Virus record (IMG/VR): IMGVR_UViG_3300022698_000267
Coordinates: 62,001 to 126,000 of that record
Strand: one strand, 5' to 3'
DNA: 64,000 bases
Position numbers and translations under genes: made by a program. Below the pieces are notes generated by a model, which was not told where the DNA came from, searched no databases, and worked only from the letters and a program-made list of their open reading frames with translations. Below, piece after piece: positions 29,796-45,754 of the stretch (positions within the stretch are counted from its first letter, which is position 1; each line of letters begins with the position of its first letter).

Positions 29796-30779
29796 TTGTG
29801 GAGAATGATAATGATAATAAATGAAAAACTAACAGTTAATGAAAAAATAATAGTGTATATGATCTTTGGTTCTCATCTATATGGAACTAACACACCTGAT
29901 TCTGACACAGATTACAAAGGGGTTTTCTTTCCAACTAAAGAACAGATATTTCTTGGAAGAATCCCAAAATCTTATTCCACCAGCCCAAAGAAAACAGGAC
30001 AGGGACAAAAAAATACCTCTGATGATACTGATATAGAAATCTATTCTCTCCACTACTTTTTAAAATTAGCATGTGAAGGACAAACTGTTGCTATAGACAT
30101 GCTTCACGCTCCAAGTCATATGCTTTTGGAATCTTCTGAGATTTGGGATTTCATTGTAGGAAATAAACATAGATTCTACAGCAGAGATATGGATTCTTTT
30201 ATTCGCTATGCTAGGAAACAGGCGGCTAAATATGGAATAAAAGGTAGTCGTTTAGCCGTAACCAAAGAATTTATAGATTTACTAAATTCTGTTCCAGATG
30301 ATACAAGACTTTCTGAGTTATGGAATAAACTTCCAGATGGTGAACATTGTTATTTTGTGGAAGATGACCCAAAAGGAATTGCTCAATATCAAATCTGTGG
30401 AAAAAAGTTTCAAGCTACTAGTAAAGCATTGTATGTTAAGAAAATAGTTCAAAGTTTCTATGATCGTTATGGTGAACGTGCTAAACAGGCTGAATTAAAT
30501 CAAGGGATTGATTGGAAAGCAGTTTCACATGCTTTAAGAGCCGCTTATCAAACCAGGCAAATTTTAACAGAAGGAACCATAACTTATCCTCTAAAAGAAT
30601 CTGGTTTTCTACGGGATGTGAAGCAGGGTTATTTTCACTACACTAAATACGTTGGTCCTGTTTTAGAAGCTCTTATGGATGAACTTGAAGAGCTTTCTAA
30701 AAATAGTGATCTTCCTGCAACAGCCGATAGAAAGTACTGGGATACCTTCCTCATAGATCTCATCGATGCAACTCTTTAA
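29796..30779 (+). CDS. Pol-beta superfamily nucleotidyltransferase (T4 NrdC.11 / RlaP-like)
   Basis: FGSHLYGTNTPDSDTDYKGV and DWKAVSHALR. Confidence 0.85.
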   Translation: MWRMIMIINEKLTVNEKIIVYMIFGSHLYGTNTPDSDTDYKGVFFPTKEQIFLGRIPKSYSTSPKKTGQGQKNTSDDTDIEIYSLHYFLKLACEGQTVAIDMLHAPSHMLLESSEIWDFIVGNKHRFYSRDMDSFIRYARKQAAKYGIKGSRLAVTKEFIDLLNSVPDDTRLSELWNKLPDGEHCYFVEDDPKGIAQYQICGKKFQATSKALYVKKIVQSFYDRYGERAKQAELNQGIDWKAVSHALRAAYQTRQILTEGTITYPLKESGFLRDVKQGYFHYTKYVGPVLEALMDELEELSKNSDLPATADRKYWDTFLIDLIDATL

Positions 30780-35212: not shown

Positions 35213-36022
35213 TCAATTTGATTCTTCGATGATTGGGTCTTCTCCATTGAAAATAACTCCTACTCTATTGGTTACTTTAGAAAATACAGGCATATCTAGT
35301 CTTCTAACTTCTGTTCTTTCAATTTCTAGATCAGGATTCTCTCTTGCTTCATGTTTTGGTGGAAGTTTTTCAATTTCTTTAGTATCAAACTTCCTAAGGA
35401 CTGTTCTTTTTTGGAAGTACATTCCTCGTTTAAAATTAGCAGGATAATCATTCCAGTTCACACCTTTTTCAAATAACATTTCCTGCATATCTTTTCCATT
35501 TTTCTTGTGTAATTGTTTGTGGGAATAGTATACTCTTGCTGCCATTGAAATACTATTTTTGGTAGCATCAAATTCTCTCCACAAAATAACATTGGCTGCT
35601 TCTTGTTTAGTCGGGACTTCCCATGCTCTACAATCGAATAGAGCAACTCTGTGTGCTTTTTCAGGAATCATCTTACTTAAATAAGCATTAAAGGTTGCAG
35701 TGGTCACAGAAGTTAAAACAGAAACCATTTTCAATATTTTTCTATCAAAAAATATTTGGCTTTTCAAATTGTCACTGTAATATACCAGACTAATTTCATC
35801 TGATTGTGTATGACCAATACAGGCATTAGTTTCTTTAACAAGAGTATCAACAACAATACCCATTAATTCTGATAGTCTTACATCATAAGGACGTTCTAAT
35901 CCTTTTGTAAATTGACTGAAATTTTTACCATCAATTCGTACACAGATTGGAACCATAGGAAGAAACTTTCGTTTACTTTCACGTCCTTCATACATTTTCA
36001 TTCTGTCGCCTAAATCATCCAT
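35213..36022 (-). CDS. thg1: Thg1-like 3'-5' nucleotidyltransferase (tRNA-His guanylyltransferase family), intact active site
   Basis: DRMKMYE, RIDGKNF, QSDEISL, FDCR, WR..DA.KNSI, GVNWNDYP..FKRG. Confidence 0.93.
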   Translation of the reverse strand: MDDLGDRMKMYEGRESKRKFLPMVPICVRIDGKNFSQFTKGLERPYDVRLSELMGIVVDTLVKETNACIGHTQSDEISLVYYSDNLKSQIFFDRKILKMVSVLTSVTTATFNAYLSKMIPEKAHRVALFDCRAWEVPTKQEAANVILWREFDATKNSISMAARVYYSHKQLHKKNGKDMQEMLFEKGVNWNDYPANFKRGMYFQKRTVLRKFDTKEIEKLPPKHEARENPDLEIERTEVRRLDMPVFSKVTNRVGVIFNGEDPIIEESN

Positions 36023-36036
36023 TTATCATTTCCCTC

Positions 36037-36855
36037 TTATTTTGTATCAACAATTGGGTCTTCTCCATTGAAAATAACTCCTACTCTATTGATTACTTCG
36101 GAAAATGGAGGCATGTCTAATCTTCTGACTTCCGTTCTTTCAAATTTCAGATCAGGATCTTTTCTTGCTATGTGTTTTGGTGGAAGATCTGTAATTTCCT
36201 CTTTATTGAACTTTTTGGAAACTTTTCTTCTTTGGAAAAAAGTTCCTCGTTGAAAACTAACAGGATAATCGTTTTTCCAATCCATATCTTTTTCAAGTAA
36301 CATTGCTAATCTATCTTCTTCATTCTTTCCCAACAATTGTTTATGTGAGTAATATTGTCTTGCTGCTATTGAAATACTTTTTTCAATTGCGACAGTTTCT
36401 TCCCATAGAATAATATTGGCTGCCTCTTCCAATGTTGGGACTCCCCAAGCTTTGCAAGAAAACACAGCAACACGGTGTGCTTTTTCTGGTATTACTTCTG
36501 GAAGGTATCTATTAAATGTTGCAGTAGTTACAGAAGAGATGACAGAAATCATTTTCATTATTTTTCTATCGAAAAATATTTGACCCTTCAAATCGTCATT
36601 GTAATAAATCAGATTGATTTCATTTGATTGTATATACCCAATGCAAGCATTAGTTTCTTTGACAATGGCTTCAGTAACAATCCACATCAAATCTCGCATT
36701 CGTGTATCGAAGGGTTTATCTAATCCTTTTGTAACTCGCTTCCAATCTATACCAGTAACTTGTATACAAATTGGAATCAAGGGCATAAATCTTCGATTAC
36801 TTTCACTACCTTTGTAAAGTCTCGTTCTTTCAAATAAATCGTCTAATTTGTTCAT
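36037..36855 (-). CDS. Thg1-like paralog lacking catalytic residues
   Basis: Collinear with 35213..36022 but QVTG for RIDG, QSNE for QSDE, FSCK for FDCR. Confidence 0.88.
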   Translation of the reverse strand: MNKLDDLFERTRLYKGSESNRRFMPLIPICIQVTGIDWKRVTKGLDKPFDTRMRDLMWIVTEAIVKETNACIGYIQSNEINLIYYNDDLKGQIFFDRKIMKMISVISSVTTATFNRYLPEVIPEKAHRVAVFSCKAWGVPTLEEAANIILWEETVAIEKSISIAARQYYSHKQLLGKNEEDRLAMLLEKDMDWKNDYPVSFQRGTFFQRRKVSKKFNKEEITDLPPKHIARKDPDLKFERTEVRRLDMPPFSEVINRVGVIFNGEDPIVDTK

Positions 36856-37110: not shown

Positions 37111-37596
37111 TCATTTCCTTTCTTTCCAATCAGTTATTTTAAAGGCTCTATCTTCGGTTATGTGAACAGAAAATAATTTATCAAAACCTTCATTCATACT
37201 TGGTATTTCTAATCTTTGATAGCTGGCTATTACAGCTACTTTTGGAAGATTTTTATCAAGTCGTTTTTCATTTCTTTTTATACAGATATCTAAATTTGCC
37301 TGAAAATAAAAACCAATAATCGGCATTTTTACTTTCTTCAATAAGGGAAAGTATTTTTCTCTTTCTTTTTTAGAGGGATTGGTATTATCGATAACCATTG
37401 GTTGTTCTGTTTCAATACAAAATTGAATTAATTTTGATTCTCGATTTCTGGTTTTCAACATATCCAGATTGACTCTTATATGCGTATCTGCAAAGTTCTT
37501 CTGATAGAAGGTTGATTTTCCGGTGGCTGGGATTCCAATAAAAATTATGTTATTCCTTTTCCAAGAAGCTGTTGACTTGTTTGAACTGCTTTCCAT
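37111..37596 (-). CDS. P-loop polynucleotide-kinase-like protein (AAA_33 type)
   Basis: GIPATGKST Walker A, VNLDML, VIDNTN...R, RN..R, EGFD. Confidence 0.88.
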   Translation of the reverse strand: MESSSNKSTASWKRNNIIFIGIPATGKSTFYQKNFADTHIRVNLDMLKTRNRESKLIQFCIETEQPMVIDNTNPSKKEREKYFPLLKKVKMPIIGFYFQANLDICIKRNEKRLDKNLPKVAVIASYQRLEIPSMNEGFDKLFSVHITEDRAFKITDWKERK

Positions 37597-37865
37597 TTTA
37601 TATCAAACCCTCCATCTTTAACAAAAATTGACAAGCTTTTAATCTAGTTTTAAATCCATCAGTCCCATTAAGAGGATGAGGTTTTCTCCACACAGCAGAC
37701 CATCCAGAATATTTACCTAAATTAAAAACCTGTCCAATTAACTTGCCCCCAATGTAGAAAGCATAATGACTATTTTGTAACTTCTTAAAACCATAGTCCT
37801 CAACTTTTCCATTTACATTTAAAGAATACTTCGACATTTTTTCTCCAATAAAATCTTAAACTAAT

Positions 37866-37872
37866 TTTAGTA
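37866..37872 (-). promoter_or_regulatory. Candidate late promoter TACTAAA for the kinase/Thg1 operon (motif also - at 41112, 42769, 49646)
   Basis: TTTAGTA on + strand upstream of minus-strand starts. Confidence 0.55.
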
Positions 37873-38205
37873 TATTTTCAGGAAATACTAAAAATAATCG
37901 AACTTAAATTTTAGGGATGCAACCAGGTAAAAAATTATATAGGTTTTGAAGATGCTGTTGCTGAACAATTCATAGAAGGTGCTTAAAGATGAAAGACTGG
38001 TTGTGGTTATATTTTACAGGTATTATTCTTGGAATTTATGCTTTTTTAATTATAACCCTTCGGATTTTGAAACGATATCGTGAAAAGAAATTGGAAAATT
38101 GTCCCATGTGGATAAGAACCAATATTCCCAAATGGAATACTGGCAACAAGAAGAAAGATAAATACAAGAAGTGGAATCTAAAGTGATGTAAATGGAGAAT
38201 TCAAA

Positions 38206-38376
38206 TCACTTCTTCTTTGGCTTCAATTTTGTTTTTGTTTCACCAGAATAGGTCTTCCCACCCTTTGAACAAAATTTCCTGTACTGATTTTTCTTCAAAC
38301 CGAACTTTTTGTTTGGTCCAGTAACAGTCCAAATCTTACCACCATCGGAAATGCATTTCATAAAATCAGCTGGCAT
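38206..38376 (-). CDS. 56-aa basic protein (not in ORF track)
   Basis: MPADFMKCISDGGKIWTVTG...GETKTKLKPKKK with SD AGGAGG. Confidence 0.65.
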   Translation of the reverse strand: MPADFMKCISDGGKIWTVTGPNKKFGLKKNQYRKFCSKGGKTYSGETKTKLKPKKK

Positions 38377-38725
38377 AGTAAAACCTCCTCATATAACCAA
38401 GGTTTTCTAAATAAAACAAAAACCTCTGAATAAAAGGATAGAAAAATGATAACTATAAACCCACTTTTATACTTTGTAGTGCTCTTGTTAATCGTTGTAC
38501 TAATTGCAATACATCTTAGCAAAAAATTCCATATGAAAATTCAAAAGTCGTTAGAGAACGTCCAAACCACAAACGTTAGAATCCTTGGAGTCGTGGAAGA
38601 CACCCTAGCTGGTATTGAGTATCTAAGAGAAGATATTAGAACACAATTCCATAAATGACAGATAAAAATTTAAGGACGCTGGAAGAAATTAAGTTCCTGA
38701 TGGAAAATCCAGAAGAGGATTAAAA

Positions 38726-39322
38726 ATGAAACTTAAAGCACCAAGAGCCCTAATAGAATTAACCGGCCACATTTACTTCCACAAACTTCCCGGTTTTATA
38801 CTATACAGGCCTCATATGCATAAAGTAAGAGGTGAGGACGTACGAAAAGTTTTAGATGTAGTAGAAACCGGTGACATACTACTAAGACGATTCGATGGAT
38901 ACCTCAACACAATTCTAACTCCTGGATTCTGGGGACATGCTGGAACCTACATAGGAGAAAACGATGTTGTCCATTCATTAAGCCAAGGAGTAACTCAAGA
39001 AGACATTCTAAACTTCTGTAGAGCCGATGCAATATCAATCCTTAGACCACTCAATGGTCCAATCCCAAACGTAAGAGAAATTGCTATAGCCCTTGCAGAT
39101 GAACACGTCCCATACGATTACGACTTCTGCTCAGGCAATAAAGCCTACTATTGCACAGAACTGGTCGACTACTTATCAGGATGGATATTCAAAAACGATT
39201 ACCAAATGATAGGAGGAAATTTGATACTAACTCCGGATGGGATTTTCAATAGCACACAAGCATATAAAAAACTAACGATTAACTACAGGAATCCTTCTAG
39301 AAGTCTTATTTCAACTTATTAA
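38726..39322 (+). CDS. Permuted papain-like (YiiX/YebB-type NlpC/P60) amidase
   Basis: GDILLR, WGHAG (His before Cys), PYDYDF, YYCTELV, TPDG. Confidence 0.85.
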   Translation: MKLKAPRALIELTGHIYFHKLPGFILYRPHMHKVRGEDVRKVLDVVETGDILLRRFDGYLNTILTPGFWGHAGTYIGENDVVHSLSQGVTQEDILNFCRADAISILRPLNGPIPNVREIAIALADEHVPYDYDFCSGNKAYYCTELVDYLSGWIFKNDYQMIGGNLILTPDGIFNSTQAYKKLTINYRNPSRSLISTY

Positions 39323-39906
39323 AACTGTCTTTTCAACCTCCAAGAATTTTGTATATTCGAGTATAATAGAAATTCGTCCTCAATTAAATCTTGCAAAGAA
39401 GATTTCAAAGTAGCATCAAAATCTTCAACACTAATATCCCACCCCATCTTTGCCAGAGCATAAGAAACTCCATTAAAAGTTAAGGAACCTCTCTCCTGCT
39501 CAAAAATCTTCTTCAAATCTTTTTTCAAAGCCTTGTAAGGAGGTTCCTTAAATTCTACCAACTTCCAAACCATTTGAATATTAGAATACGATAAATAACC
39601 TTCATCAACCAAGGCAAGTAGATTACGCCGAATCTCACGTTCGAAATCCTTTCTGTCATGAATCGTCCAACCACTCCTAAGCAAGATCGTCACCAAATCA
39701 GTAGTATACAAAGGTCTCAACTCAGACTTAAAAATTTCAAGCAAAACATCTTTTAAATTCGGATCTTCAACAGGATCTTCAACAGGATCTTCAGCTAATC
39801 CTAACAAATCAGACATTTCATCAAGACTTTTTCGAATGGAATTCAAAGAACGACGAAAAATTTTACTAACTTCCTTGTCCATAATCCTCTCCTCATACGA
39901 TTGCAT
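39319..39906 (-). CDS. Two-repeat winged-helix-like protein (paralog family)
   Basis: Repeated IF..E...L.....L...GW.I....F...I...L..L..EG.L.YS unit. Confidence 0.55.
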   Translation of the reverse strand: MQSYEERIMDKEVSKIFRRSLNSIRKSLDEMSDLLGLAEDPVEDPVEDPNLKDVLLEIFKSELRPLYTTDLVTILLRSGWTIHDRKDFEREIRRNLLALVDEGYLSYSNIQMVWKLVEFKEPPYKALKKDLKKIFEQERGSLTFNGVSYALAKMGWDISVEDFDATLKSSLQDLIEDEFLLYSNIQNSWRLKRQF

Positions 39907-40531
39907 AAGTCAAAACATTTCCCTTACTAGAGTAAGTCAAAAATCCTTCTCCAACCAAAATGGATAAAGTATTACTAACTTTACGTTTAAAATTGGCATT
40001 GTCAACCAACCACCCCTCTTCAGCCAAAATCTTTATCAAATCTTCGAAATGTATAATTCCCGGTCCCTCCTTAAAAATTCTAATCAAATTCTTTTTCAAC
40101 GCTCTATAAGGAGCAACATCTTCGGCCCCACGAAACTTCCAAACATCCTTGGAATTAGTAGTGATTTTATTTGAGCAATCGAAATACTCCAAAATCCCGT
40201 CCTCAACCAAGCTGGACAAAGCAGTACGAATATTCTTCTTAAATCCAGCATTACTAATCGGCCACCCCTGCTCAAACAAAATCACCAGCAAATCATTAAA
40301 CGATAAAGTACCCTGTTCCCTTTTAAAAATCGTAATCAAATTCCTCCTTACCGTACTAACAGGAACAAGAATAGACGTCATCTTCTTGCCCTCCTCCCTC
40401 TCTTCCTCCTCCATCTTCTTATGCTCCTCAACTACCATACTCCACTCAAGCCAACCAACTACTTCATCAAGACTTTTTTGCATCGAAACCAAAGAAGAAC
40501 GAATCTTTTCAACATCTTTTCCACTAATCAT
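39893..40531 (-). CDS. Two-repeat winged-helix-like protein (paralog family)
   Basis: Same repeated unit; N-terminal SL.S..KSLDE helix shared. Confidence 0.55.
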   Translation of the reverse strand: MISGKDVEKIRSSLVSMQKSLDEVVGWLEWSMVVEEHKKMEEEEREEGKKMTSILVPVSTVRRNLITIFKREQGTLSFNDLLVILFEQGWPISNAGFKKNIRTALSSLVEDGILEYFDCSNKITTNSKDVWKFRGAEDVAPYRALKKNLIRIFKEGPGIIHFEDLIKILAEEGWLVDNANFKRKVSNTLSILVGEGFLTYSSKGNVLTYAIV

Positions 40532-40809
40532 GACTTATCTCCTCTCTCCAACCACGTACGAATCCTCTGTTTAAAATTCTTCCCATGAATATCCCATCCC
40601 CTCCTAGCAAGAAGAATCATCAAATCCTCAAACGTCAAAGGCTCATCCTCCTCATGAAAAATCTCCTTCAAATCTTTATGCAACGCCTTATAAGGAAGAC
40701 ACTTACCCACCTCAAAAGAAACCCCTCTCTCCTCTGCAACCACATCAATCACAGCATCAAGACTATTTCTAACAGAAACCAAACAAGAATGCAAAACTTC
40801 CAAATCCAT
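40528..40809 (-). CDS. Single-repeat member of the same family
   Basis: PYKALHKDLKEIF..E...LTFEDL..LL...GWDI; start at MDLEVL with SD GGGAGG. Confidence 0.55.
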   Translation of the reverse strand: MDLEVLHSCLVSVRNSLDAVIDVVAEERGVSFEVGKCLPYKALHKDLKEIFHEEDEPLTFEDLMILLARRGWDIHGKNFKQRIRTWLERGDKS

Positions 40810-40822
40810 AAAAATACCTCCC

Positions 40823-41074
40823 CTACTGAACCGGTAAAGTAACAGGAGGAATATCCATACCACCTTCCAACCTGTCAGCACACTCCCTCAAAGCAGTTAC
40901 CATATCACCACGCTCAGCATTCGAAATATAGTTACTAACACCAGGCCTACCAAAATCAAAAACCAACAAAGCAAATCCCATCTCCCCAACAGTCTGATTT
41001 ATAACCTCCTCAATAGACAAACCCAAAATCTTCATAAATTCTTCTGTCTTCCTCTGCTTCTCAATATCATCCAA
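40823..41074 (-). CDS. Conserved small hypothetical protein
   Basis: GFALLVFDFG...NYISNAER.DM..ALRE pattern; SD GGAGG, TTG start. Confidence 0.6.
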   Translation of the reverse strand: MDDIEKQRKTEEFMKILGLSIEEVINQTVGEMGFALLVFDFGRPGVSNYISNAERGDMVTALRECADRLEGGMDIPPVTLPVQ

Positions 41075-41099
41075 AACAAATCCTCCAAAAATATTCAGT

Positions 41100-41770
41100 A
41101 GTAAATCATAGTTTAGTAGATTTTCGACACAAGTTACAGACCGAAATCAAGACGATCCAAAAAAATCCTGAAGAAAAGAAAGTAGAATTTCGACAAAAGA
41201 AGAAGAACGAGTCTTAACCAAAAAAACAGAAAAGAAGAAAAAGAAACCTTACCTAAAGAAAAAATTCTAAAACAAAAAGAAAGTAAAGAAAAAGAAACCT
41301 AATAAGGAAAGGTAAACAAAAAGAAAGGAAGTACCTTATTTGAAAGTAAGGAAAGGGGTAGTCTAGAAGGACTGTATTGATTAGAAGAGAAAGTCTATAA
41401 AGTTTGTTCTAGATATTTTTATAGGTAGAATAGGAGATTTACTTGTATTGTAGGCAGAAAAAACCTCTAGTTTTGTGTAGTGGATGTATTCTAGATGTTT
41501 TTCTAGGAAGTAATGAGGCATTACTTGTATTGTAGGCAGAAAAAGTCTATAGAGTTTACTCTAGATGTTTTTATAGGAAGTAATGAGGGTATTCTACTGT
41601 TTATTGACAGAAAAAACCTCTATTTTAGGAAGACTCATCGAAAAAATTAAAAGTTGCTAAAACCCCATACTGCGGCTTCAAACAATCCCTTCCTCATTTA
41701 TAAGAAGAAATCTGCTATAAAGGCTCTGGAAGTGGACATGAAAATTCTAGAGTCGTTCTAGAAGGAGTCT
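41100..41770. repeat. Non-coding block: A-rich tract then imperfect direct repeats (origin or terminus candidate)
   Basis: TTACTTGTATTGTAGGCAGAAAAA at 41439 and 41521; TCTAGATRTTTTTMTAGG at 41408, 41490, 41560; C/G skew flips here. Confidence 0.7.
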
Positions 41771-42430
41771 AAAGTCATTCTAGAATTTCTGATAGTACTT
41801 CCCAAAAAGATTTTTTAACACTATACTAACGTAAAGTCCCTCAGAGAAGGTGGCAGAGGATTTGGCAAGTTCGTATATAACGAAGGCACATATTACGAAG
41901 GGTAGAAGCAATGCTGTAAAGAATTTTTCCATAGCTTCTGCAACTAAAGGATTATTCCTCACGAAATTCTTTAATAAAAGTTTCATCGTGGGAATTTCCT
42001 TTCCACAGGTTCGAATCTTTTACAATCGAACTTCTTTACTTTACCAGTTGAGAGGTACGTTGTCCCCATATAGTCTGGACATTTCTTTGGATCTATCTGG
42101 TAATTCTTATTTTTATTCTTTCTACATCGTTCACAAAGATCATTTTCATCAAACATACTTTAATCCTCCTTTAACGATGTTTTTCTATTTCGATTCGAAA
42201 GATAAACAATCGAAGTGGAAGATTCCATTTCTTTCGTAACTCTTTTCCTTACATTTTGGGCAGTTTTGTGGAGTGAGTGTATAAAGACCCTTTTTATTAT
42301 GCTTACATTCTGGGCAGACTTCGTTTACTATTTGATTAACTTCCATTTTATACATCCTTTCTTCTAAATGAGGGATTTATTCGCAGTATGTAGGCTAATG
42401 AAGATGCTTCCCAATACCCTTATATACCTT

Positions 42431-42745
42431 TTACCCTTCATTAGCCTGTACATCAGTCTTACTAAATGTAACGCCGTCTTTTTCATTTATATGTTCTCGC
42501 AATTGTTCGATTGCAGATTTATAACCATAAATTGTATCGATAACATCATTAACTTCTTGTTCTGGATATCCTTCATCGATGAGTATTTGTCTAGTCATTT
42601 CAAGAAAGACCTTTGCCTCTTTACTGTTAAAAGCTTTAAGGAAAGCTAGTGTGGATAGAGTACCAGTGGTTTCAGTTAAGATTTGTTGTCTAACTGAAGG
42701 AGTGACTGTTTTGTTTTCAAATAGATTTTTAAGAAGATTTTTCAT
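42431..42745 (-). CDS. Hypothetical protein
   Basis: SD GGAGGT; TACTAAA upstream. Confidence 0.7.
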   Translation of the reverse strand: MKNLLKNLFENKTVTPSVRQQILTETTGTLSTLAFLKAFNSKEAKVFLEMTRQILIDEGYPEQEVNDVIDTIYGYKSAIEQLREHINEKDGVTFSKTDVQANEG

Positions 42746-42780
42746 TGCTACCTCCTCTTCTTCTTTAGTTTAGTATCTTC

Positions 42781-43025
42781 TTTCGATAATTAGTAACTTG
42801 CGTTAACTTAATGCTCAAAGCGACCGCAGGTTACTACGTAACCTGTATATAGAAGATTTCTTCTTTGTCTTTCGAAAATGCGAAAGCTGCGTTAACTATA
42901 TTTCCAAGGCTTTCGAAAATGCGAAAGCTGCGTTAACTAGGTAGAACAAAACTCGGACGAACACTTCGACCGTAAGTTACTACGTAACTTATATATAGGC
43001 GAAAATGAGATAACTGCGTTAACTT
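42781..43025. repeat. Non-coding block with iteron-like repeats and two covarying palindromes
   Basis: 30-nt perfect repeat at 42869 and 42910; TGCGTTAACT x4; CAGGTTAC-TAC-GTAACCTG and TAAGTTAC-TAC-GTAACTTA. Confidence 0.85.
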
Positions 43026-43178
43026 AGGAGAGACAATCTTCTTTATGCCAGACAACAATCTTCTTGCTTTCTCTCAGGTACCTTTCTTTTTCTTCTTCAG
43101 CTTTGTGATGCTCGATTATTGCAAGGATGATTAAAGTTGTACAGATGATGGCAGCAATTATTGTAAAAGTGATGAACA

Positions 43179-43865: not shown

Positions 43866-43894
43866 TTGACTTTCCATTACAAAACCTATATAAT
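43866..43894 (+). promoter_or_regulatory. Early sigma70-type promoter
   Basis: TTGACT-17-TATAAT. Confidence 0.8.
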
Positions 43895-44722: not shown

Positions 44723-45754
44723 ATGACTTCGGATTTAACTATAATAGCAAATGACAGTTTGGTTCTAGAAAAGAAGATGTTGGGTTTTTTAAAGCATACC
44801 AGATTATTCTTCGAGAACATCATCACTTATCTAAAAGGAAAACGGTTAACTAAAAGCAATTTTCGTATTGAAGACACTTCAGTTGTTCCTAACTACATAA
44901 CTGACATTGAAGAAATTTTGGATAGAGGTGAAGAACTTGTTGTTCTGGAGCATATTGTTAACGAACTTCATCCAAAAAGATGTTTCCTTTTTGATATGAT
45001 GCAGGAGCTAATGAAGAGTGAAGTTCTTTCTGATGAAGAGAGAAACAAGGCTAAATCCATTTGTGATGATTATTTACAGAAAGTTGTTTGGAGACTTTGT
45101 AACTCAGAATTATCTTTGGTAAAGAAAAAAGCTGGAAGTATTGCTCGTGGAGTAACTAGTGTTTCTTTCCAGGATAAAGTGGGTTATGGTTATGAAGGAT
45201 TGTTAAAGGCAGCTCATAAATTTGATTTCGAAAAGGGGATCAAATTTAATACCTATGCTTCTTGGTGGATTTGGGAAAGTATTTTGAATGGATGTAACAA
45301 TGAAATGTACTTTTTGAAGGTTGAAAGTCCAAAACAACAGAAGTACATAAAATTTCTATCATCCAGTCGAAAAAGAGATGGAAAAGAATCCACTCATTTG
45401 TCTTCATCTGAACTATTAGAGATTTATGCAGCATGTAACATTGCTTCTGTATATGGCGAAGATGGTGAAGACCATTCTGATTTGAAGATCGATGATAGTA
45501 ATTCAGAAGTTTTCTACCATAGTAATCCCGAAAACATTTTAAATATTTCTCAGAATCCCAGATCAATGTTAGAAGATACAATAAATACTAAATTGAATAA
45601 GGATGAGAGAAAGATTTTAACTCATTACTATGGTATTTTGGATTGTAGAAAACGATCAGAGAGTCAATTATGTCGTTCCTTTGGTTTTACGATAACACAA
45701 TTGAGAGATAAAATTCAGGAAATTCTCTCTAAGATAAGGGAAGACATGATATAA
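44723..45754 (+). CDS. Phage-encoded sigma70-family RNA polymerase sigma factor
   Basis: Region 2 GLLKAAHKFDFEKGIKFNTYASWWI; degenerate region 4 (L...ERKIL..YYG...IL.KIR). Confidence 0.88.
   Translation: MTSDLTIIANDSLVLEKKMLGFLKHTRLFFENIITYLKGKRLTKSNFRIEDTSVVPNYITDIEEILDRGEELVVLEHIVNELHPKRCFLFDMMQELMKSEVLSDEERNKAKSICDDYLQKVVWRLCNSELSLVKKKAGSIARGVTSVSFQDKVGYGYEGLLKAAHKFDFEKGIKFNTYASWWIWESILNGCNNEMYFLKVESPKQQKYIKFLSSSRKRDGKESTHLSSSELLEIYAACNIASVYGEDGEDHSDLKIDDSNSEVFYHSNPENILNISQNPRSMLEDTINTKLNKDERKILTHYYGILDCRKRSESQLCRSFGFTITQLRDKIQEILSKIREDMI

What the first reader, a model, noticed from the sequence alone, without database searches (positions are those of the whole stretch)
38400..41770. Extreme C/G skew that flips at a repeat-rich non-coding block
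Seen: + strand becomes very G-poor approaching 41.1 kb (6 G vs 23 C in 40681-40740), even in the + strand gene 38726..39322, then after an A-rich tract turns G/T-rich (15 G vs 6 C in 41461-41520) with 70-82 nt spaced repeats and clustered TCTAGA. Inference: bidirectional replication origin, or the physical genome end/terminal-repeat boundary, since the early-promoter region starts about 2 kb downstream as in SPO1/T5-type layouts.
Basis: partly seen in the sequence, partly recalled or inferred. Interest (0 to 1): 0.6.

Follow-up and report, generated by a model that had tools for sequence, protein, structure and literature searches.

The report
Strand-specific mutation gradient beside phage control region
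In an uncultivated 274-kb phage, a 3.5-kb run of genes next to a conserved non-coding block carries an extreme one-strand base bias that fades with distance and ignores gene direction, which looks like the mark of DNA held single-stranded where copying starts in one direction.

Summary
The 1-kb window at 40101 has the lowest GC skew (-0.53) of the 273,563-bp genome, and the seven TCTAGA sites form its densest cluster. It is not ordinary coding-strand skew: at third codon positions the - strand is 88% G/T beside the non-coding block (41075-41780) and falls steadily to 62% over 2.8 kb, through four - strand and two + strand genes alike. Homologs of the C92 amidase in other phages have ordinary composition, so the bias arose in place, mainly as A->G and C->T on the - strand. 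A second, mirror-image gradient lies at genome 163.4-165 kb. In both, the biased strand runs 5'->3' away from a non-coding block, as expected for a strand displaced by outward RNA or DNA synthesis. Best reading (0.4): a one-directional R-loop/D-loop-type initiation zone, like T4 oriF or ColE1. A replichore-dividing bidirectional origin is not supported, because the bias never switches sign genome-wide. A physical genome end is not supported either: the polarity is wrong and related contigs read through. The block itself is a conserved regulatory module. No sequencing run was listed, so coverage could not be tested.

The parts
37598..41100 (.). Zone of strand-specific substitution gradient. The - strand is G/T-rich at synonymous sites, strongest at about 40500-41100 and fading leftward, irrespective of gene orientation.
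   Evidence: Fraction of third positions that are G/T on the - strand, in 400-nt bins leftward from 41100: 0.88, 0.84, 0.74, 0.74, 0.66, 0.70, 0.62 (baseline 0.44-0.49). Spearman rho -0.77, p = 6e-9.
38446..38658 (+). 70-aa membrane protein (possibly holin-like, since it sits next to the amidase). Third-position bias reversed relative to its own coding strand.
   Evidence: ORF and hydrophobic N-terminus; keto3 -0.24.
38726..39322 (+). Peptidase_C92 (YiiX/YycO-type permuted papain amidase). Its coding strand is C/A-rich at third positions (GC3 skew -0.60).
   Evidence: Pfam 8.8e-11. Homologs in other phages have GC3 skew -0.10 to +0.16. Synonymous differences from the 74% homolog: 48 toward A/C against 13 toward G/T, p = 8e-6.
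39319..39906 (-). Winged-helix paralog 1 (195 aa; the JGI gene call starts at 39882).
   Evidence: 32-46% identity to the other two paralogs; GC3 skew +0.69.
39893..40531 (-). Winged-helix paralog 2 (212 aa): a long N-terminal helix plus two winged-helix domains. Orphan family.
   Evidence: AF2 model, pLDDT 71. Tandem-WH and generic wHTH structural matches. No relative among 1.84 billion representatives apart from its own paralog.
40528..40812 (-). Winged-helix paralog 3 (94 aa, one domain). It has no C at any of its 95 third codon positions.
40823..41074 (-). 83-aa protein (phrog_35296, function unknown), the first gene after the block. 88% G/T at third positions.
   Evidence: PHROG 4.7e-8; composition.
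41115..41210 (.). Two copies of AGTAGAWTTTCGACA, 66 nt apart, at the point where GC skew changes sign. The (A)AGTAGA motif is shared with the relatives' modules.
   Evidence: Repeat family D10; AGTAGA seen 8 times against 0.9 expected across three lineages' modules.
41150..41350 (+). A-rich, purine-rich tract (T/C-rich on the - strand) carrying repeated AAAGAAACCT motifs. Only moderately easy to melt.
   Evidence: 118 A of 201; duplex stability z up to 2.0 only; equivalent tracts in L001 4290-4500 and L008 1925-2120.
41386..41626 (+). Three tandem repeat units of about 70-82 nt, G/T-rich on the + strand, each containing TCTAGAT.TTTT.TAGG and a (G/A)ACAGAAAAA..CTCTA core.
   Evidence: Lineage-specific arrays sit at the same place in L001 (4709-5190) and L008 (2240-2490).
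41628..41659 (+). Conserved element GGAAGACTCATCGAAAAAATTAAAAGTTGCTA that follows the repeats in relatives as well.
   Evidence: Alignment of window, L001 and L008.
41742..41788 (.). Triplet of TTCTAGA(A/G) palindromes at 11- and 22-bp spacing, operator-like. They overlap two weak leftward sigma-70-like promoter matches whose -10 is TAGAAT.
   Evidence: The same TTCTAGAAGGAGTCTA...TTCTAGAA arrangement occurs in L008 2750-2790.
42784..43031 (+). Array of CTGCGTTAACT motifs with hairpin GTTAC-TAC-GTAAC. Copy number varies (4 motif copies here, 7 in the same region of the sister contig L006). Probably rightward promoter-like elements.
43866..43894 (+). Near-consensus sigma-70 promoter (TTGACT-17-TATAAT) in the divergent region ahead of the conserved rightward block (small ORF, dUTPase, sigma-like factor).
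   Evidence: synteny in all relatives.

Best explanation
The non-coding block at 41075-41780 is a conserved regulatory module. Its left edge (about 41100-41200) is a fixed start point for nucleic-acid synthesis that moves leftward. The parental - strand is displaced and stays single-stranded for a long time. It accumulates the two hydrolytic deamination changes, A->G and C->T, most heavily next to the start and less with distance. That yields the extreme C>G, A>T composition of the + strand across 37.6-41.1 kb whatever the gene orientation. I take this for a one-directional, R-loop- or D-loop-primed replication initiation zone of the T4 oriF/oriG or ColE1 kind, one of at least two in this genome (the other at genome 163.3 kb, firing rightward). 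SHOWN: the gradient, its independence of gene orientation, its origin in place, its substitution types, its polarity, the second locus, and the conservation of the block. INFERRED: that single-strandedness is the cause, and that DNA synthesis rather than transcription alone starts here.
For: (1) The third-position G/T fraction on the - strand falls from 0.88 to 0.62 over 2.8 kb through four - strand and two + strand genes (rho -0.77, p = 6e-9). (2) - strand A at third positions rises with distance (0.095, 0.116, 0.169, 0.219, 0.256, 0.254; baseline about 0.39-0.41). - strand C is nearly absent (0.024, 0, 0.07, 0.05, 0.065) until it recovers at 0.127. This is the pattern described for the strand left single-stranded in mitochondrial DNA (PMC3269015, PMC9561281). 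(3) The bias is strongest at codon position 3. (4) It arose in place. C92 homologs in three other phage contigs have ordinary composition that matches their neighbours. Differences from the 74% homolog are T->C 31 against C->T 6, and 48 against 13 overall (p = 8e-6). (5) A second island at genome 163.37-165.0 kb has the + strand G/T fraction at 0.86, 0.72, 0.63, 0.55, 0.54, 0.48 through three - strand methyltransferase genes; homologs elsewhere are ordinary. (6) In both islands the enriched strand runs 5'->3' away from a non-coding block, which is the polarity of a displaced non-template strand. (7) No other gene block in the genome comes close; only five ORFs of 80 codons or more are |z|>3 outliers: three at this locus, one at locus 2, and one isolated 83-codon ORF at genome 268.4 kb that was not examined. 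Genes downstream of the consensus promoter at 43866 are ordinary. So strong transcription alone does not produce it. (8) The phage carries a T4 RNase H/FEN-family nuclease, a RecA/UvsX-like recombinase, a DnaB-like helicase and a PolA. [quoted passage not shown] ColE1 leaves a polymerase footprint over at least 1.3 kb from its R-loop primer (PMC3167613). GC skew favours R-loops (PMC3787257).
Against: There is no direct evidence of replication start: no reads, no coverage, no replication assay. The homologous module in relatives casts only a weak gradient (L008) or essentially none (L001), so the module by itself is not sufficient. The A-rich tract is not an outstanding unwinding element (z <= 2). 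No recognisable initiator is encoded nearby: the adjacent tandem winged-helix proteins match no Rep family. The replication genes lie 65-115 kb away. Only weak promoter matches face left. Mutation and selection on DNA composition cannot be told apart from one genome. The two blocks share no significant sequence.
Confidence: 0.4

Rival explanations
1. Transcription only. A very active or R-loop-prone leftward promoter in the block keeps the non-template (- strand) DNA single-stranded. Deamination associated with transcription makes the gradient, and no DNA replication starts here.
For: It predicts the same polarity and a decay away from the promoter. The four most skewed genes are co-oriented with the gradient. 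Leftward promoter-like matches overlap the conserved TCTAGA palindromes. No terminator is predicted between 41.07 and 38.2 kb, and the 195-aa gene and C92 overlap tail to tail, so read-through is possible. In L001 a strong hairpin terminator sits at the module's left edge and there is no gradient. Transcriptional single-strandedness is also said to cause gradients (PMC3269015).
Against: At locus 2 the gradient runs antisense through all three genes, so the strongest transcription-linked signal there would belong to an antisense RNA. Genes behind the near-consensus promoter at 43866, and all other gene blocks, show nothing similar; the highest coding-strand keto3 of any other gene of 150 aa or more is 0.33, against 0.46-0.77 here.
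Confidence: 0.25
2. Selection on sequence, not mutation. The DNA or RNA of this stretch is kept G-poor on the + strand for a function, such as forming R-loops, avoiding a nuclease or restriction motif, or an RNA-level role.
For: The bias is extreme (no C at 95 third positions of one gene). G+C content rises locally to 0.41. Skewed non-coding repeat arrays are kept in relatives: L008 at +0.60, L001 at -0.5.
Against: A smooth decay over 3.5 kb across unrelated genes of both orientations, repeated in mirror image at an unrelated locus, is what a distance-dependent mutation process gives, and is hard to derive from a motif or RNA constraint. The + strand mRNAs and - strand mRNAs end up with opposite compositions, so no single RNA-level rule fits.
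Confidence: 0.12
3. Classical bidirectional (theta) origin that divides the genome into two replichores.
For: The sign of the local flip is correct. The block holds direct repeats, palindromes and an A-rich tract.
Against: Orientation-corrected + strand bias is positive on both sides for the whole genome. The global cumulative-skew minimum is at genome 54.6 kb and tracks gene orientation. The right-hand arm of the local signal is only about 0.3 kb, and the genes to the right are near baseline.
Confidence: 0.08
4. Foreign DNA imported with a pre-existing skew, for example from a replicon with strong strand asymmetry.
For: The cassette (membrane protein, C92 and four small - strand genes) is absent at this position in relatives. 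The winged-helix genes are orphans. G+C is locally higher. The sister assembly breaks inside the cassette at 39958.
Against: The nearest C92 homologs (74% and 73% identity) come from similar large phage contigs, and the 74% copy examined, like the more distant ones, has ordinary composition. The gradient is monotonic and anchored at the block, and it continues into genes beyond the cassette (37598-38376). An unrelated gene cluster at locus 2 shows the same pattern.
Confidence: 0.07
5. Physical genome end, pac site or terminal-repeat boundary.
For: Repeat-rich non-coding DNA lies close to an early-type promoter region. Several relatives' contigs end within a few kb of the equivalent place, and L006 starts at 39958.
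Against: Four assemblies of three lineages read straight through the block. Contig breaks are expected at repeat arrays. 5'->3' resection at an end or double-strand break exposes the strand with its 3' end at the break, which is the opposite of the strand that is biased here. End-primed displacement would need a protein-primed polymerase, but the phage has PolA. The portal and terminase are T4-type. The two gradients point away from each other, not into a shared repeat.
Confidence: 0.04

Closest known systems
Bacteriophage T4 origins oriF/oriG (R-loop-primed)
   Same: Several origins per genome. Each has a non-coding control element with a promoter and an A+T-rich stretch. The non-template strand is held single-stranded, and leading-strand synthesis starts in one direction. 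The phage here has a T4-type portal, a FEN/RNase H-family nuclease and a UvsX/RecA-like protein (PMC3016281).
   Different: T4 minimal origins are about 100 bp, and the T4 review consulted (PMC3016281) does not mention one. Here the block is 700 bp with tandem repeats and palindromes. The promoter is not identified, the A-rich tract is only mildly unstable, and replication from it is untested.
ColE1-type plasmid origin
   Same: One-directional initiation from an R-loop primer. A distance-dependent, strand-specific mutational footprint extends at least 1.3 kb downstream of the RNA/DNA switch (PMC3167613). G-rich RNA pairs with a C-rich template.
   Different: The ColE1 footprint was produced experimentally with an error-prone Pol I. 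Here it is an evolutionary composition gradient of 3.5 kb in a phage, with no RNA II/RNA I homology (no Rfam match).
Deamination gradients of vertebrate mitochondrial DNA and of chloroplast genomes
   Same: A->G and C->T on the strand left single-stranded. Strongest at third codon positions, graded with distance from the start, independent of gene orientation. C->T is near saturation while A->G stays graded (PMC3269015, PMC9561281, PMC2695485).
   Different: In organelles the gradient spans the whole genome. Here there are two local islands of 1.5-3.5 kb in a 274-kb double-stranded DNA phage whose remaining genome shows only a faint uniform bias.
GC-skewed R-loop zones at promoters and terminators (CpG-island type)
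   Same: A kb-scale stretch with strong G>C on the non-template strand, starting just downstream of a control region (PMC3787257).
   Different: That is a eukaryotic phenomenon defined by R-loop mapping. Here the skew covers protein-coding genes of both orientations and includes an A/T component.
Iteron-plasmid initiators (RepE/RepA/pi) with their iterons
   Same: Small proteins with an N-terminal helix and two winged-helix domains, encoded next to direct repeats.
   Different: No sequence match to Rep families. No Rep structure appears among the top structural matches; the matches are generic wHTH. The repeats are 70-82-nt units, not 19-22-bp iterons.

Membership tests
Bidirectional chromosomal-type origin (replichore boundary) | Global extremum of cumulative GC skew at the site | tested here: not met
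   The global minimum is at genome 54,583. This site is only a local minimum inside a 10-kb leftward gene block.
Bidirectional chromosomal-type origin (replichore boundary) | Strand bias, corrected for gene orientation, changes sign across the site over long distances | tested here: not met
   The + strand G/T fraction at third positions is 0.47-0.585 in every 15-kb bin, for both gene orientations, on both sides.
Bidirectional chromosomal-type origin (replichore boundary) | AT-rich unwinding element plus repeated initiator-binding sites | tested here: inconclusive
   Repeats and palindromes are present and conserved. The A-rich tract is only z <= 2 in duplex stability, and 12 other 100-mers in the window are less stable.
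T4-type R-loop origin | Promoter transcribing into a downstream A+T-rich element | tested here: inconclusive
   Only 9-of-12 leftward sigma-70-like matches at 41805-41744. The phage has its own sigma-like factor, whose promoters are unknown. The T/C-rich tract lies downstream of those matches on the - strand.
T4-type R-loop origin | Persistent R-loop with a single-stranded non-template strand | not testable with these tools
   Indirect only: a deamination-type gradient on the strand that would be non-template.
T4-type R-loop origin | [quoted passage not shown] | not testable with these tools
   The gradient is one-sided. No run was listed for a coverage analysis.
T4-type R-loop origin | Phage enzymes to process the primer and load the replisome | tested here: met
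   5_3_exonuc_N (T4 RNase H family) 8.9e-25; RecA-like 2.4e-31; DnaB_C 1.3e-11; PolA 6e-49. No type-1 RNase H and no Toprim_2 match.
Organelle-type single-strand deamination gradient | Excess of A->G and C->T on one DNA strand, seen as G+T enrichment at synonymous sites | tested here: met
   Third positions in the - strand genes: A 0.10-0.22 against 0.39 baseline, C 0-0.07 against 0.13, G 0.28-0.40 against 0.12, T 0.43-0.51 against 0.36. C92 against its homolog: T->C 31, C->T 6 on the + strand.
Organelle-type single-strand deamination gradient | Monotonic dependence on distance from a start point, independent of gene orientation, strongest at codon position 3 | tested here: met
   Replicated at locus 2.
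Physical terminus / direct terminal repeat boundary (T5/SPO1 type) | Coverage step or read-start pile-up; repeat of the terminal segment | not testable with these tools
   No run was listed. The contig has no terminal overlap, and its ends lie in paralogous fibre-like genes.
Physical terminus / direct terminal repeat boundary (T5/SPO1 type) | Independent assemblies end at the site | tested here: not met
   L005, L006, L001 and L007/L008 read through the block. Breaks in other contigs fall in nearby repeat arrays.
Iteron-plasmid Rep initiators | Membership of a Rep sequence family, or a specific structural match to RepE/RepA/pi | tested here: not met
   No Pfam, NCBIfam or PHROG hit. The best structural matches are generic or tandem winged-helix proteins. 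RTP reaches only E 0.1 by sequence and rank 23 by fold.

The most novel reading that the evidence does not exclude
Fixed, one-directional replication start sites of an uncultivated jumbo phage can be read directly from its sequence as kb-scale single-strand deamination gradients. This genome has two, at 103 kb firing leftward and at 163 kb firing rightward. The high local mutation pressure also drives fast divergence of the genes that lie in them, such as the orphan triplet of winged-helix genes. That would give a sequence-only way to map phage origins and their direction, and would describe a natural local hypermutation zone.
Probability: 0.3. Interest if true: 0.75.

Novelty: new variant of a known kind. 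Interest (0 to 1): 0.62.

Why it matters
Replication origins of large uncultivated phages are essentially unknown. Whole-genome GC skew is uninformative in them because it follows gene orientation, as it does here. A local gradient at synonymous sites that ignores gene orientation, has the chemistry of single-strand deamination, and is anchored at a conserved non-coding module would be a new kind of sequence evidence for where and in which direction synthesis starts. It also shows that a few kilobases of a phage genome can sit under a mutation pressure strong enough to remove every third-position C from a gene, which bears on how orphan genes arise. Even if transcription alone is the cause, it marks two exceptional R-loop-prone units worth testing.

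Tried and rejected
- Nearest relatives by DNA or protein in the phage collection and in IMG/VR: none.
- The motif TTCTAGAAGGAGTCTA in IMG/VR gave only two chance hits inside unrelated genes. The longer palindrome pattern in metagenome contigs returned only the contig already held.
- Sequencing runs for a coverage or read-start analysis: none was listed.
- Rfam on both non-coding blocks: nothing above noise. No tRNA in the window.
- Sequence similarity between block 1 and block 2: only chance-level short words.
- An exceptional unwinding element: not found.
- Link of the winged-helix paralogs to the replication terminator protein RTP or to iteron initiators: only generic winged-helix similarity. 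The atlas search gave low-scoring leads only.
- Polymorphisms between the window and sister contig L006, to polarise mutations: the two are identical apart from a 232-bp repeat expansion.
- Ordinary coding-strand skew as the full explanation: rejected, because the + strand genes carry the opposite sign on their own coding strand.
- Wrong-strand gene calls as the explanation: rejected. The - strand ORFs tile with short overlaps, have Shine-Dalgarno sites, are paralogous at protein level and fold as winged-helix domains.


Full report
CONTEXT. The window is bases 62001-126000 of a single 273,563-bp contig with about 36% G+C. It is an IMG/VR virus record that CheckV rates 97% complete and classes as 'linear'. 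The genome encodes a T4-type portal, with a weak T4-type large-terminase match next to it. It also encodes a DnaB-like helicase, a family-A DNA polymerase with an N-terminal uracil-DNA-glycosylase domain, NAD-dependent ligase, gyrase A, ribonucleotide reductase, a FEN/T4-RNase-H-family nuclease and a RecA/UvsX-like protein. It has no close relative in the phage collection or in IMG/VR. Metagenomic contigs share 50-56% identity in the sigma-like factor at 44723-45754 and the same rightward gene block: a small ORF, dUTPase, the sigma-like factor, a metallopeptidase, HU and an ADP-ribosylglycohydrolase. The contig's own ends lie inside a family of paralogous Ser-rich/Laminin-G fibre-like genes, so they are assembly breaks and say nothing about physical ends.

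The 1-kb window starting at 40101 has GC skew -0.531, the lowest in the genome (mean 0.083, sd 0.136; next lowest -0.32). Keto skew reaches -0.334, about 7 sd from the mean. GC skew changes sign between 41001-41200 (-0.35) and 41201-41400 (+0.34), and reaches +0.49 in 41401-41600. The non-coding block 41075-41780 holds, in order:
- two AGTAGAWTTTCGACA copies at the flip point;
- a 200-nt A-rich tract;
- three repeat units at 82- and 70/71-nt spacing;
- a triplet of TTCTAGA(A/G) palindromes at 11- and 22-bp spacing.
Seven TCTAGA in 423 bp, against 0.18 expected, is the densest cluster in the genome. A sister contig from another sample (L006) is 100% identical over 39958-43026, so the sequence is not an assembly error.

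IT IS NOT ORDINARY CODING-STRAND SKEW. The G-poor stretch is covered by four - strand genes (83, 94, 212 and 195 aa) and two + strand genes (a 70-aa membrane protein and a Peptidase_C92 amidase). The - strand genes have the first, second and eleventh highest coding-strand GC skews of 285 genes. The + strand amidase has the opposite sign on its own coding strand, with third-position skew -0.60. So the bias belongs to the DNA strand and not to the direction of transcription.

At third codon positions, the fraction of G/T on the - strand in 400-nt bins leftward from 41100 is 0.88, 0.84, 0.74, 0.74, 0.66, 0.70 and 0.62, against a baseline of 0.44-0.49. In 100-nt windows the correlation with distance is rho -0.77, p = 6e-9. 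The 94-aa gene has no C at any of its 95 third positions. Third-position A on the - strand rises with distance (0.095, 0.116, 0.169, 0.219, 0.256, 0.254; baseline about 0.39-0.41). Third-position C on that strand is almost absent until the far end. The bias is strongest at position 3. Two small - strand ORFs further left (38206-38376 and 37598-37837) are still elevated, and the 161-aa gene at 37111-37596 is at baseline, so the zone is about 3.5 kb long. Genes to the right of the block are near baseline, so the signal is essentially one-sided.

THE BIAS AROSE IN PLACE. The C92 amidase has many homologs. Copies on contigs of 143, 132 and 53 kb sit in ordinary co-directional blocks beside lysozyme, NlpC/P60 and response-regulator genes. 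Their third-position GC skews are +0.14, +0.16 and -0.10, like their neighbours'. At residues identical between the window's copy and the 74% homolog, the third bases differ as T->C 31, T->A 13, C->T 6, A->C 4, G->A 4 and A->T 4. That is 48 changes toward A/C against 13 toward G/T (p = 8e-6). On the - strand this is chiefly A->G. Together with the loss of C and gain of T in the - strand genes, the pattern consists of the two hydrolytic deaminations of one strand. The phage's polymerase carries a uracil-glycosylase domain. By inference, that could explain why A->G outweighs C->T.

A SECOND, MIRROR-IMAGE ISLAND. Genome-wide, only five ORFs of 80 codons or more are |z|>3 outliers for third-position keto bias. 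Three are at this locus, one is a TylF-type methyltransferase at genome 163,373-163,987, and one is an isolated 83-codon - strand ORF at genome 268,417-268,665 that I did not examine. Rightward from a 600-bp non-coding block at genome 162.76-163.37 kb, the + strand G/T fraction is 0.86, 0.72, 0.63, 0.55, 0.54 and 0.48, through three genes that are all on the - strand (TylF methyltransferase, a 303-aa protein, CmcI methyltransferase). The homologous cluster in another phage has ordinary composition. In both islands the enriched strand runs 5'->3' away from the non-coding block. That is the polarity of the non-template strand displaced by an RNA or DNA polymerase moving outward. The two blocks share no significant sequence and match no Rfam family.

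WHAT THE BLOCK IS. Relatives at about 53-55% protein identity carry recognisably homologous non-coding elements in the same order:
- an A-rich tract with AAAGAA(A)CCTTA-like motifs;
- a lineage-specific tandem-repeat array (G/T-rich in L008 with skew +0.60; C/T-rich in L001);
- the element GGAAGACTCATC.AAAA.AT.AAAGTTGCTA;
- in L008, the same TTCTAGAAGGAGTCTA......TTCTAGAA palindrome set.
Short motifs (A)AGTAGA and AGTCTA are 9-15-fold enriched in all three modules. So the block is a conserved regulatory module.

In relatives its left neighbour is the end of an ordinary rightward gene block. The skewed cassette is therefore specific to this lineage, and the relatives show only a weak gradient (L008) or essentially none (L001). 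L001 has a strong hairpin terminator at the module's left edge. Weak leftward sigma-70-like matches overlap the palindromes. The A-rich tract is only moderately easy to melt.

THE GENES IN THE GRADIENT. The three paralogs (32-46% identity) consist of a long N-terminal helix plus one or two winged-helix domains. Structural matches are tandem or generic winged-helix DNA-binding domains. Similarity to the replication terminator protein is not significant, and no iteron-initiator match appears. An exhaustive search of 1.84 billion representative proteins found no relative outside this genome. They may bind the neighbouring palindromes, but that is conjecture.

WEIGHING THE READINGS. A replichore-dividing bidirectional origin is not supported. 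The orientation-corrected strand bias never changes sign along the genome, and the global cumulative-skew minimum, at genome 54.6 kb, follows gene orientation. A physical end is not supported either. Assemblies of three lineages read through the block. Resection at an end or break would expose the other strand. The phage has PolA, not a protein-primed polymerase. The two gradients point away from each other. Import of already-skewed DNA is contradicted by the homolog comparisons and by the anchored, monotonic shape.

Two readings remain, and they share a polarity: an exceptionally R-loop-prone transcription unit, or a one-directional R-loop/D-loop-primed replication start. I prefer the second (0.4 against 0.25), for three reasons. 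At locus 2 the gradient is antisense to every gene. No other transcription unit, including the one behind a near-consensus promoter, shows anything similar. And T4, with which this phage shares a T4-type portal and a weak T4-type terminase match, uses several such one-directional origins (PMC3016281), while ColE1 shows that a kb-scale footprint can follow an R-loop primer (PMC3167613). Organelle genomes provide the chemical precedent (PMC3269015, PMC9561281, PMC2695485). None of this shows replication directly.

NOVELTY. Deamination gradients and R-loop origins are both known. Within the five literature searches run here, I found no description of local, kb-scale, orientation-independent gradients anchored at conserved non-coding modules in a large phage genome. 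I rate it a new variant of a known kind.

Noticed in passing
outside the window: genome 162,760-165,000 (L022 2760-5000): A second strand-specific gradient of mirror polarity, starting at a 600-bp non-coding block with CCACTGATACC-type repeats, an A/C-rich tract and G+C-rich hairpins. The TylF methyltransferase gene next to it has 46% C and 6% G at third positions.
   Followed up: partly
window 42784-43031 (and L006 2845-3292; L001 6570-7630; L008 3200-4220): An array of CTGCGTTAACT motifs with a conserved hairpin AAGTTAC-TAC-GTAACTT. There are 4 motif copies here and 7 in the same region of the sister contig (+232 bp). In the genome the CGTTAACT form of the motif lies almost only on the + strand, between 104 and 144 kb. 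One copy sits just upstream of a tRNA-like sequence at genome 141,407, and L001's copies are paired with TTGACA. It looks like a rightward promoter element, although - strand ORFs lie between the array and the rightward block.
   Followed up: partly
window 51882, 54105, 54865, 55659, 56358, 60018, 60980: A family of intergenic repeats of about 70-117 nt (85-100% identical) scattered through the rightward gene block. Possibly promoter or terminator cassettes.
   Followed up: no
window 35213-36022 and 36037-36855 (- strand), with 37111-37596 and 29796-30779: Two tandem Thg1-like (tRNA-His guanylyltransferase family) genes beside an AAA_33/KTI12-like kinase gene, with an RlaP-type nucleotidyltransferase nearby. 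This suggests a phage RNA-repair or tRNA-editing module.
   Followed up: no
window 39958 (start of sister contig L006): The 71-kb contig from the sister sample begins inside the 212-aa winged-helix gene. The assembly break may reflect population variation in the skewed cassette.
   Followed up: no
outside the window: genome 158,136-162,011: A 1291-aa hybrid sensor kinase (MASE3, several PAS domains, HisKA, HATPase, receiver domain) encoded by the phage at the end of the long rightward block, just before locus 2.
   Followed up: no
outside the window: genome 206,606-209,347: A family-A DNA polymerase fused to an N-terminal uracil-DNA-glycosylase-superfamily domain.
   Followed up: no
window 41983-42156 and 42185-42355 (- strand): Two small Cys-rich zinc-ribbon-like proteins (57 and 56 aa) immediately right of the non-coding block. 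They share a repeated 21-nt DNA segment.
   Followed up: no
genome 1-3000 and 255,000-273,563: Both contig ends lie in a large family of paralogous Ser-rich/Laminin_G_3 fibre-like genes (65-85% DNA identity between copies), which probably stopped the assembler.
   Followed up: partly
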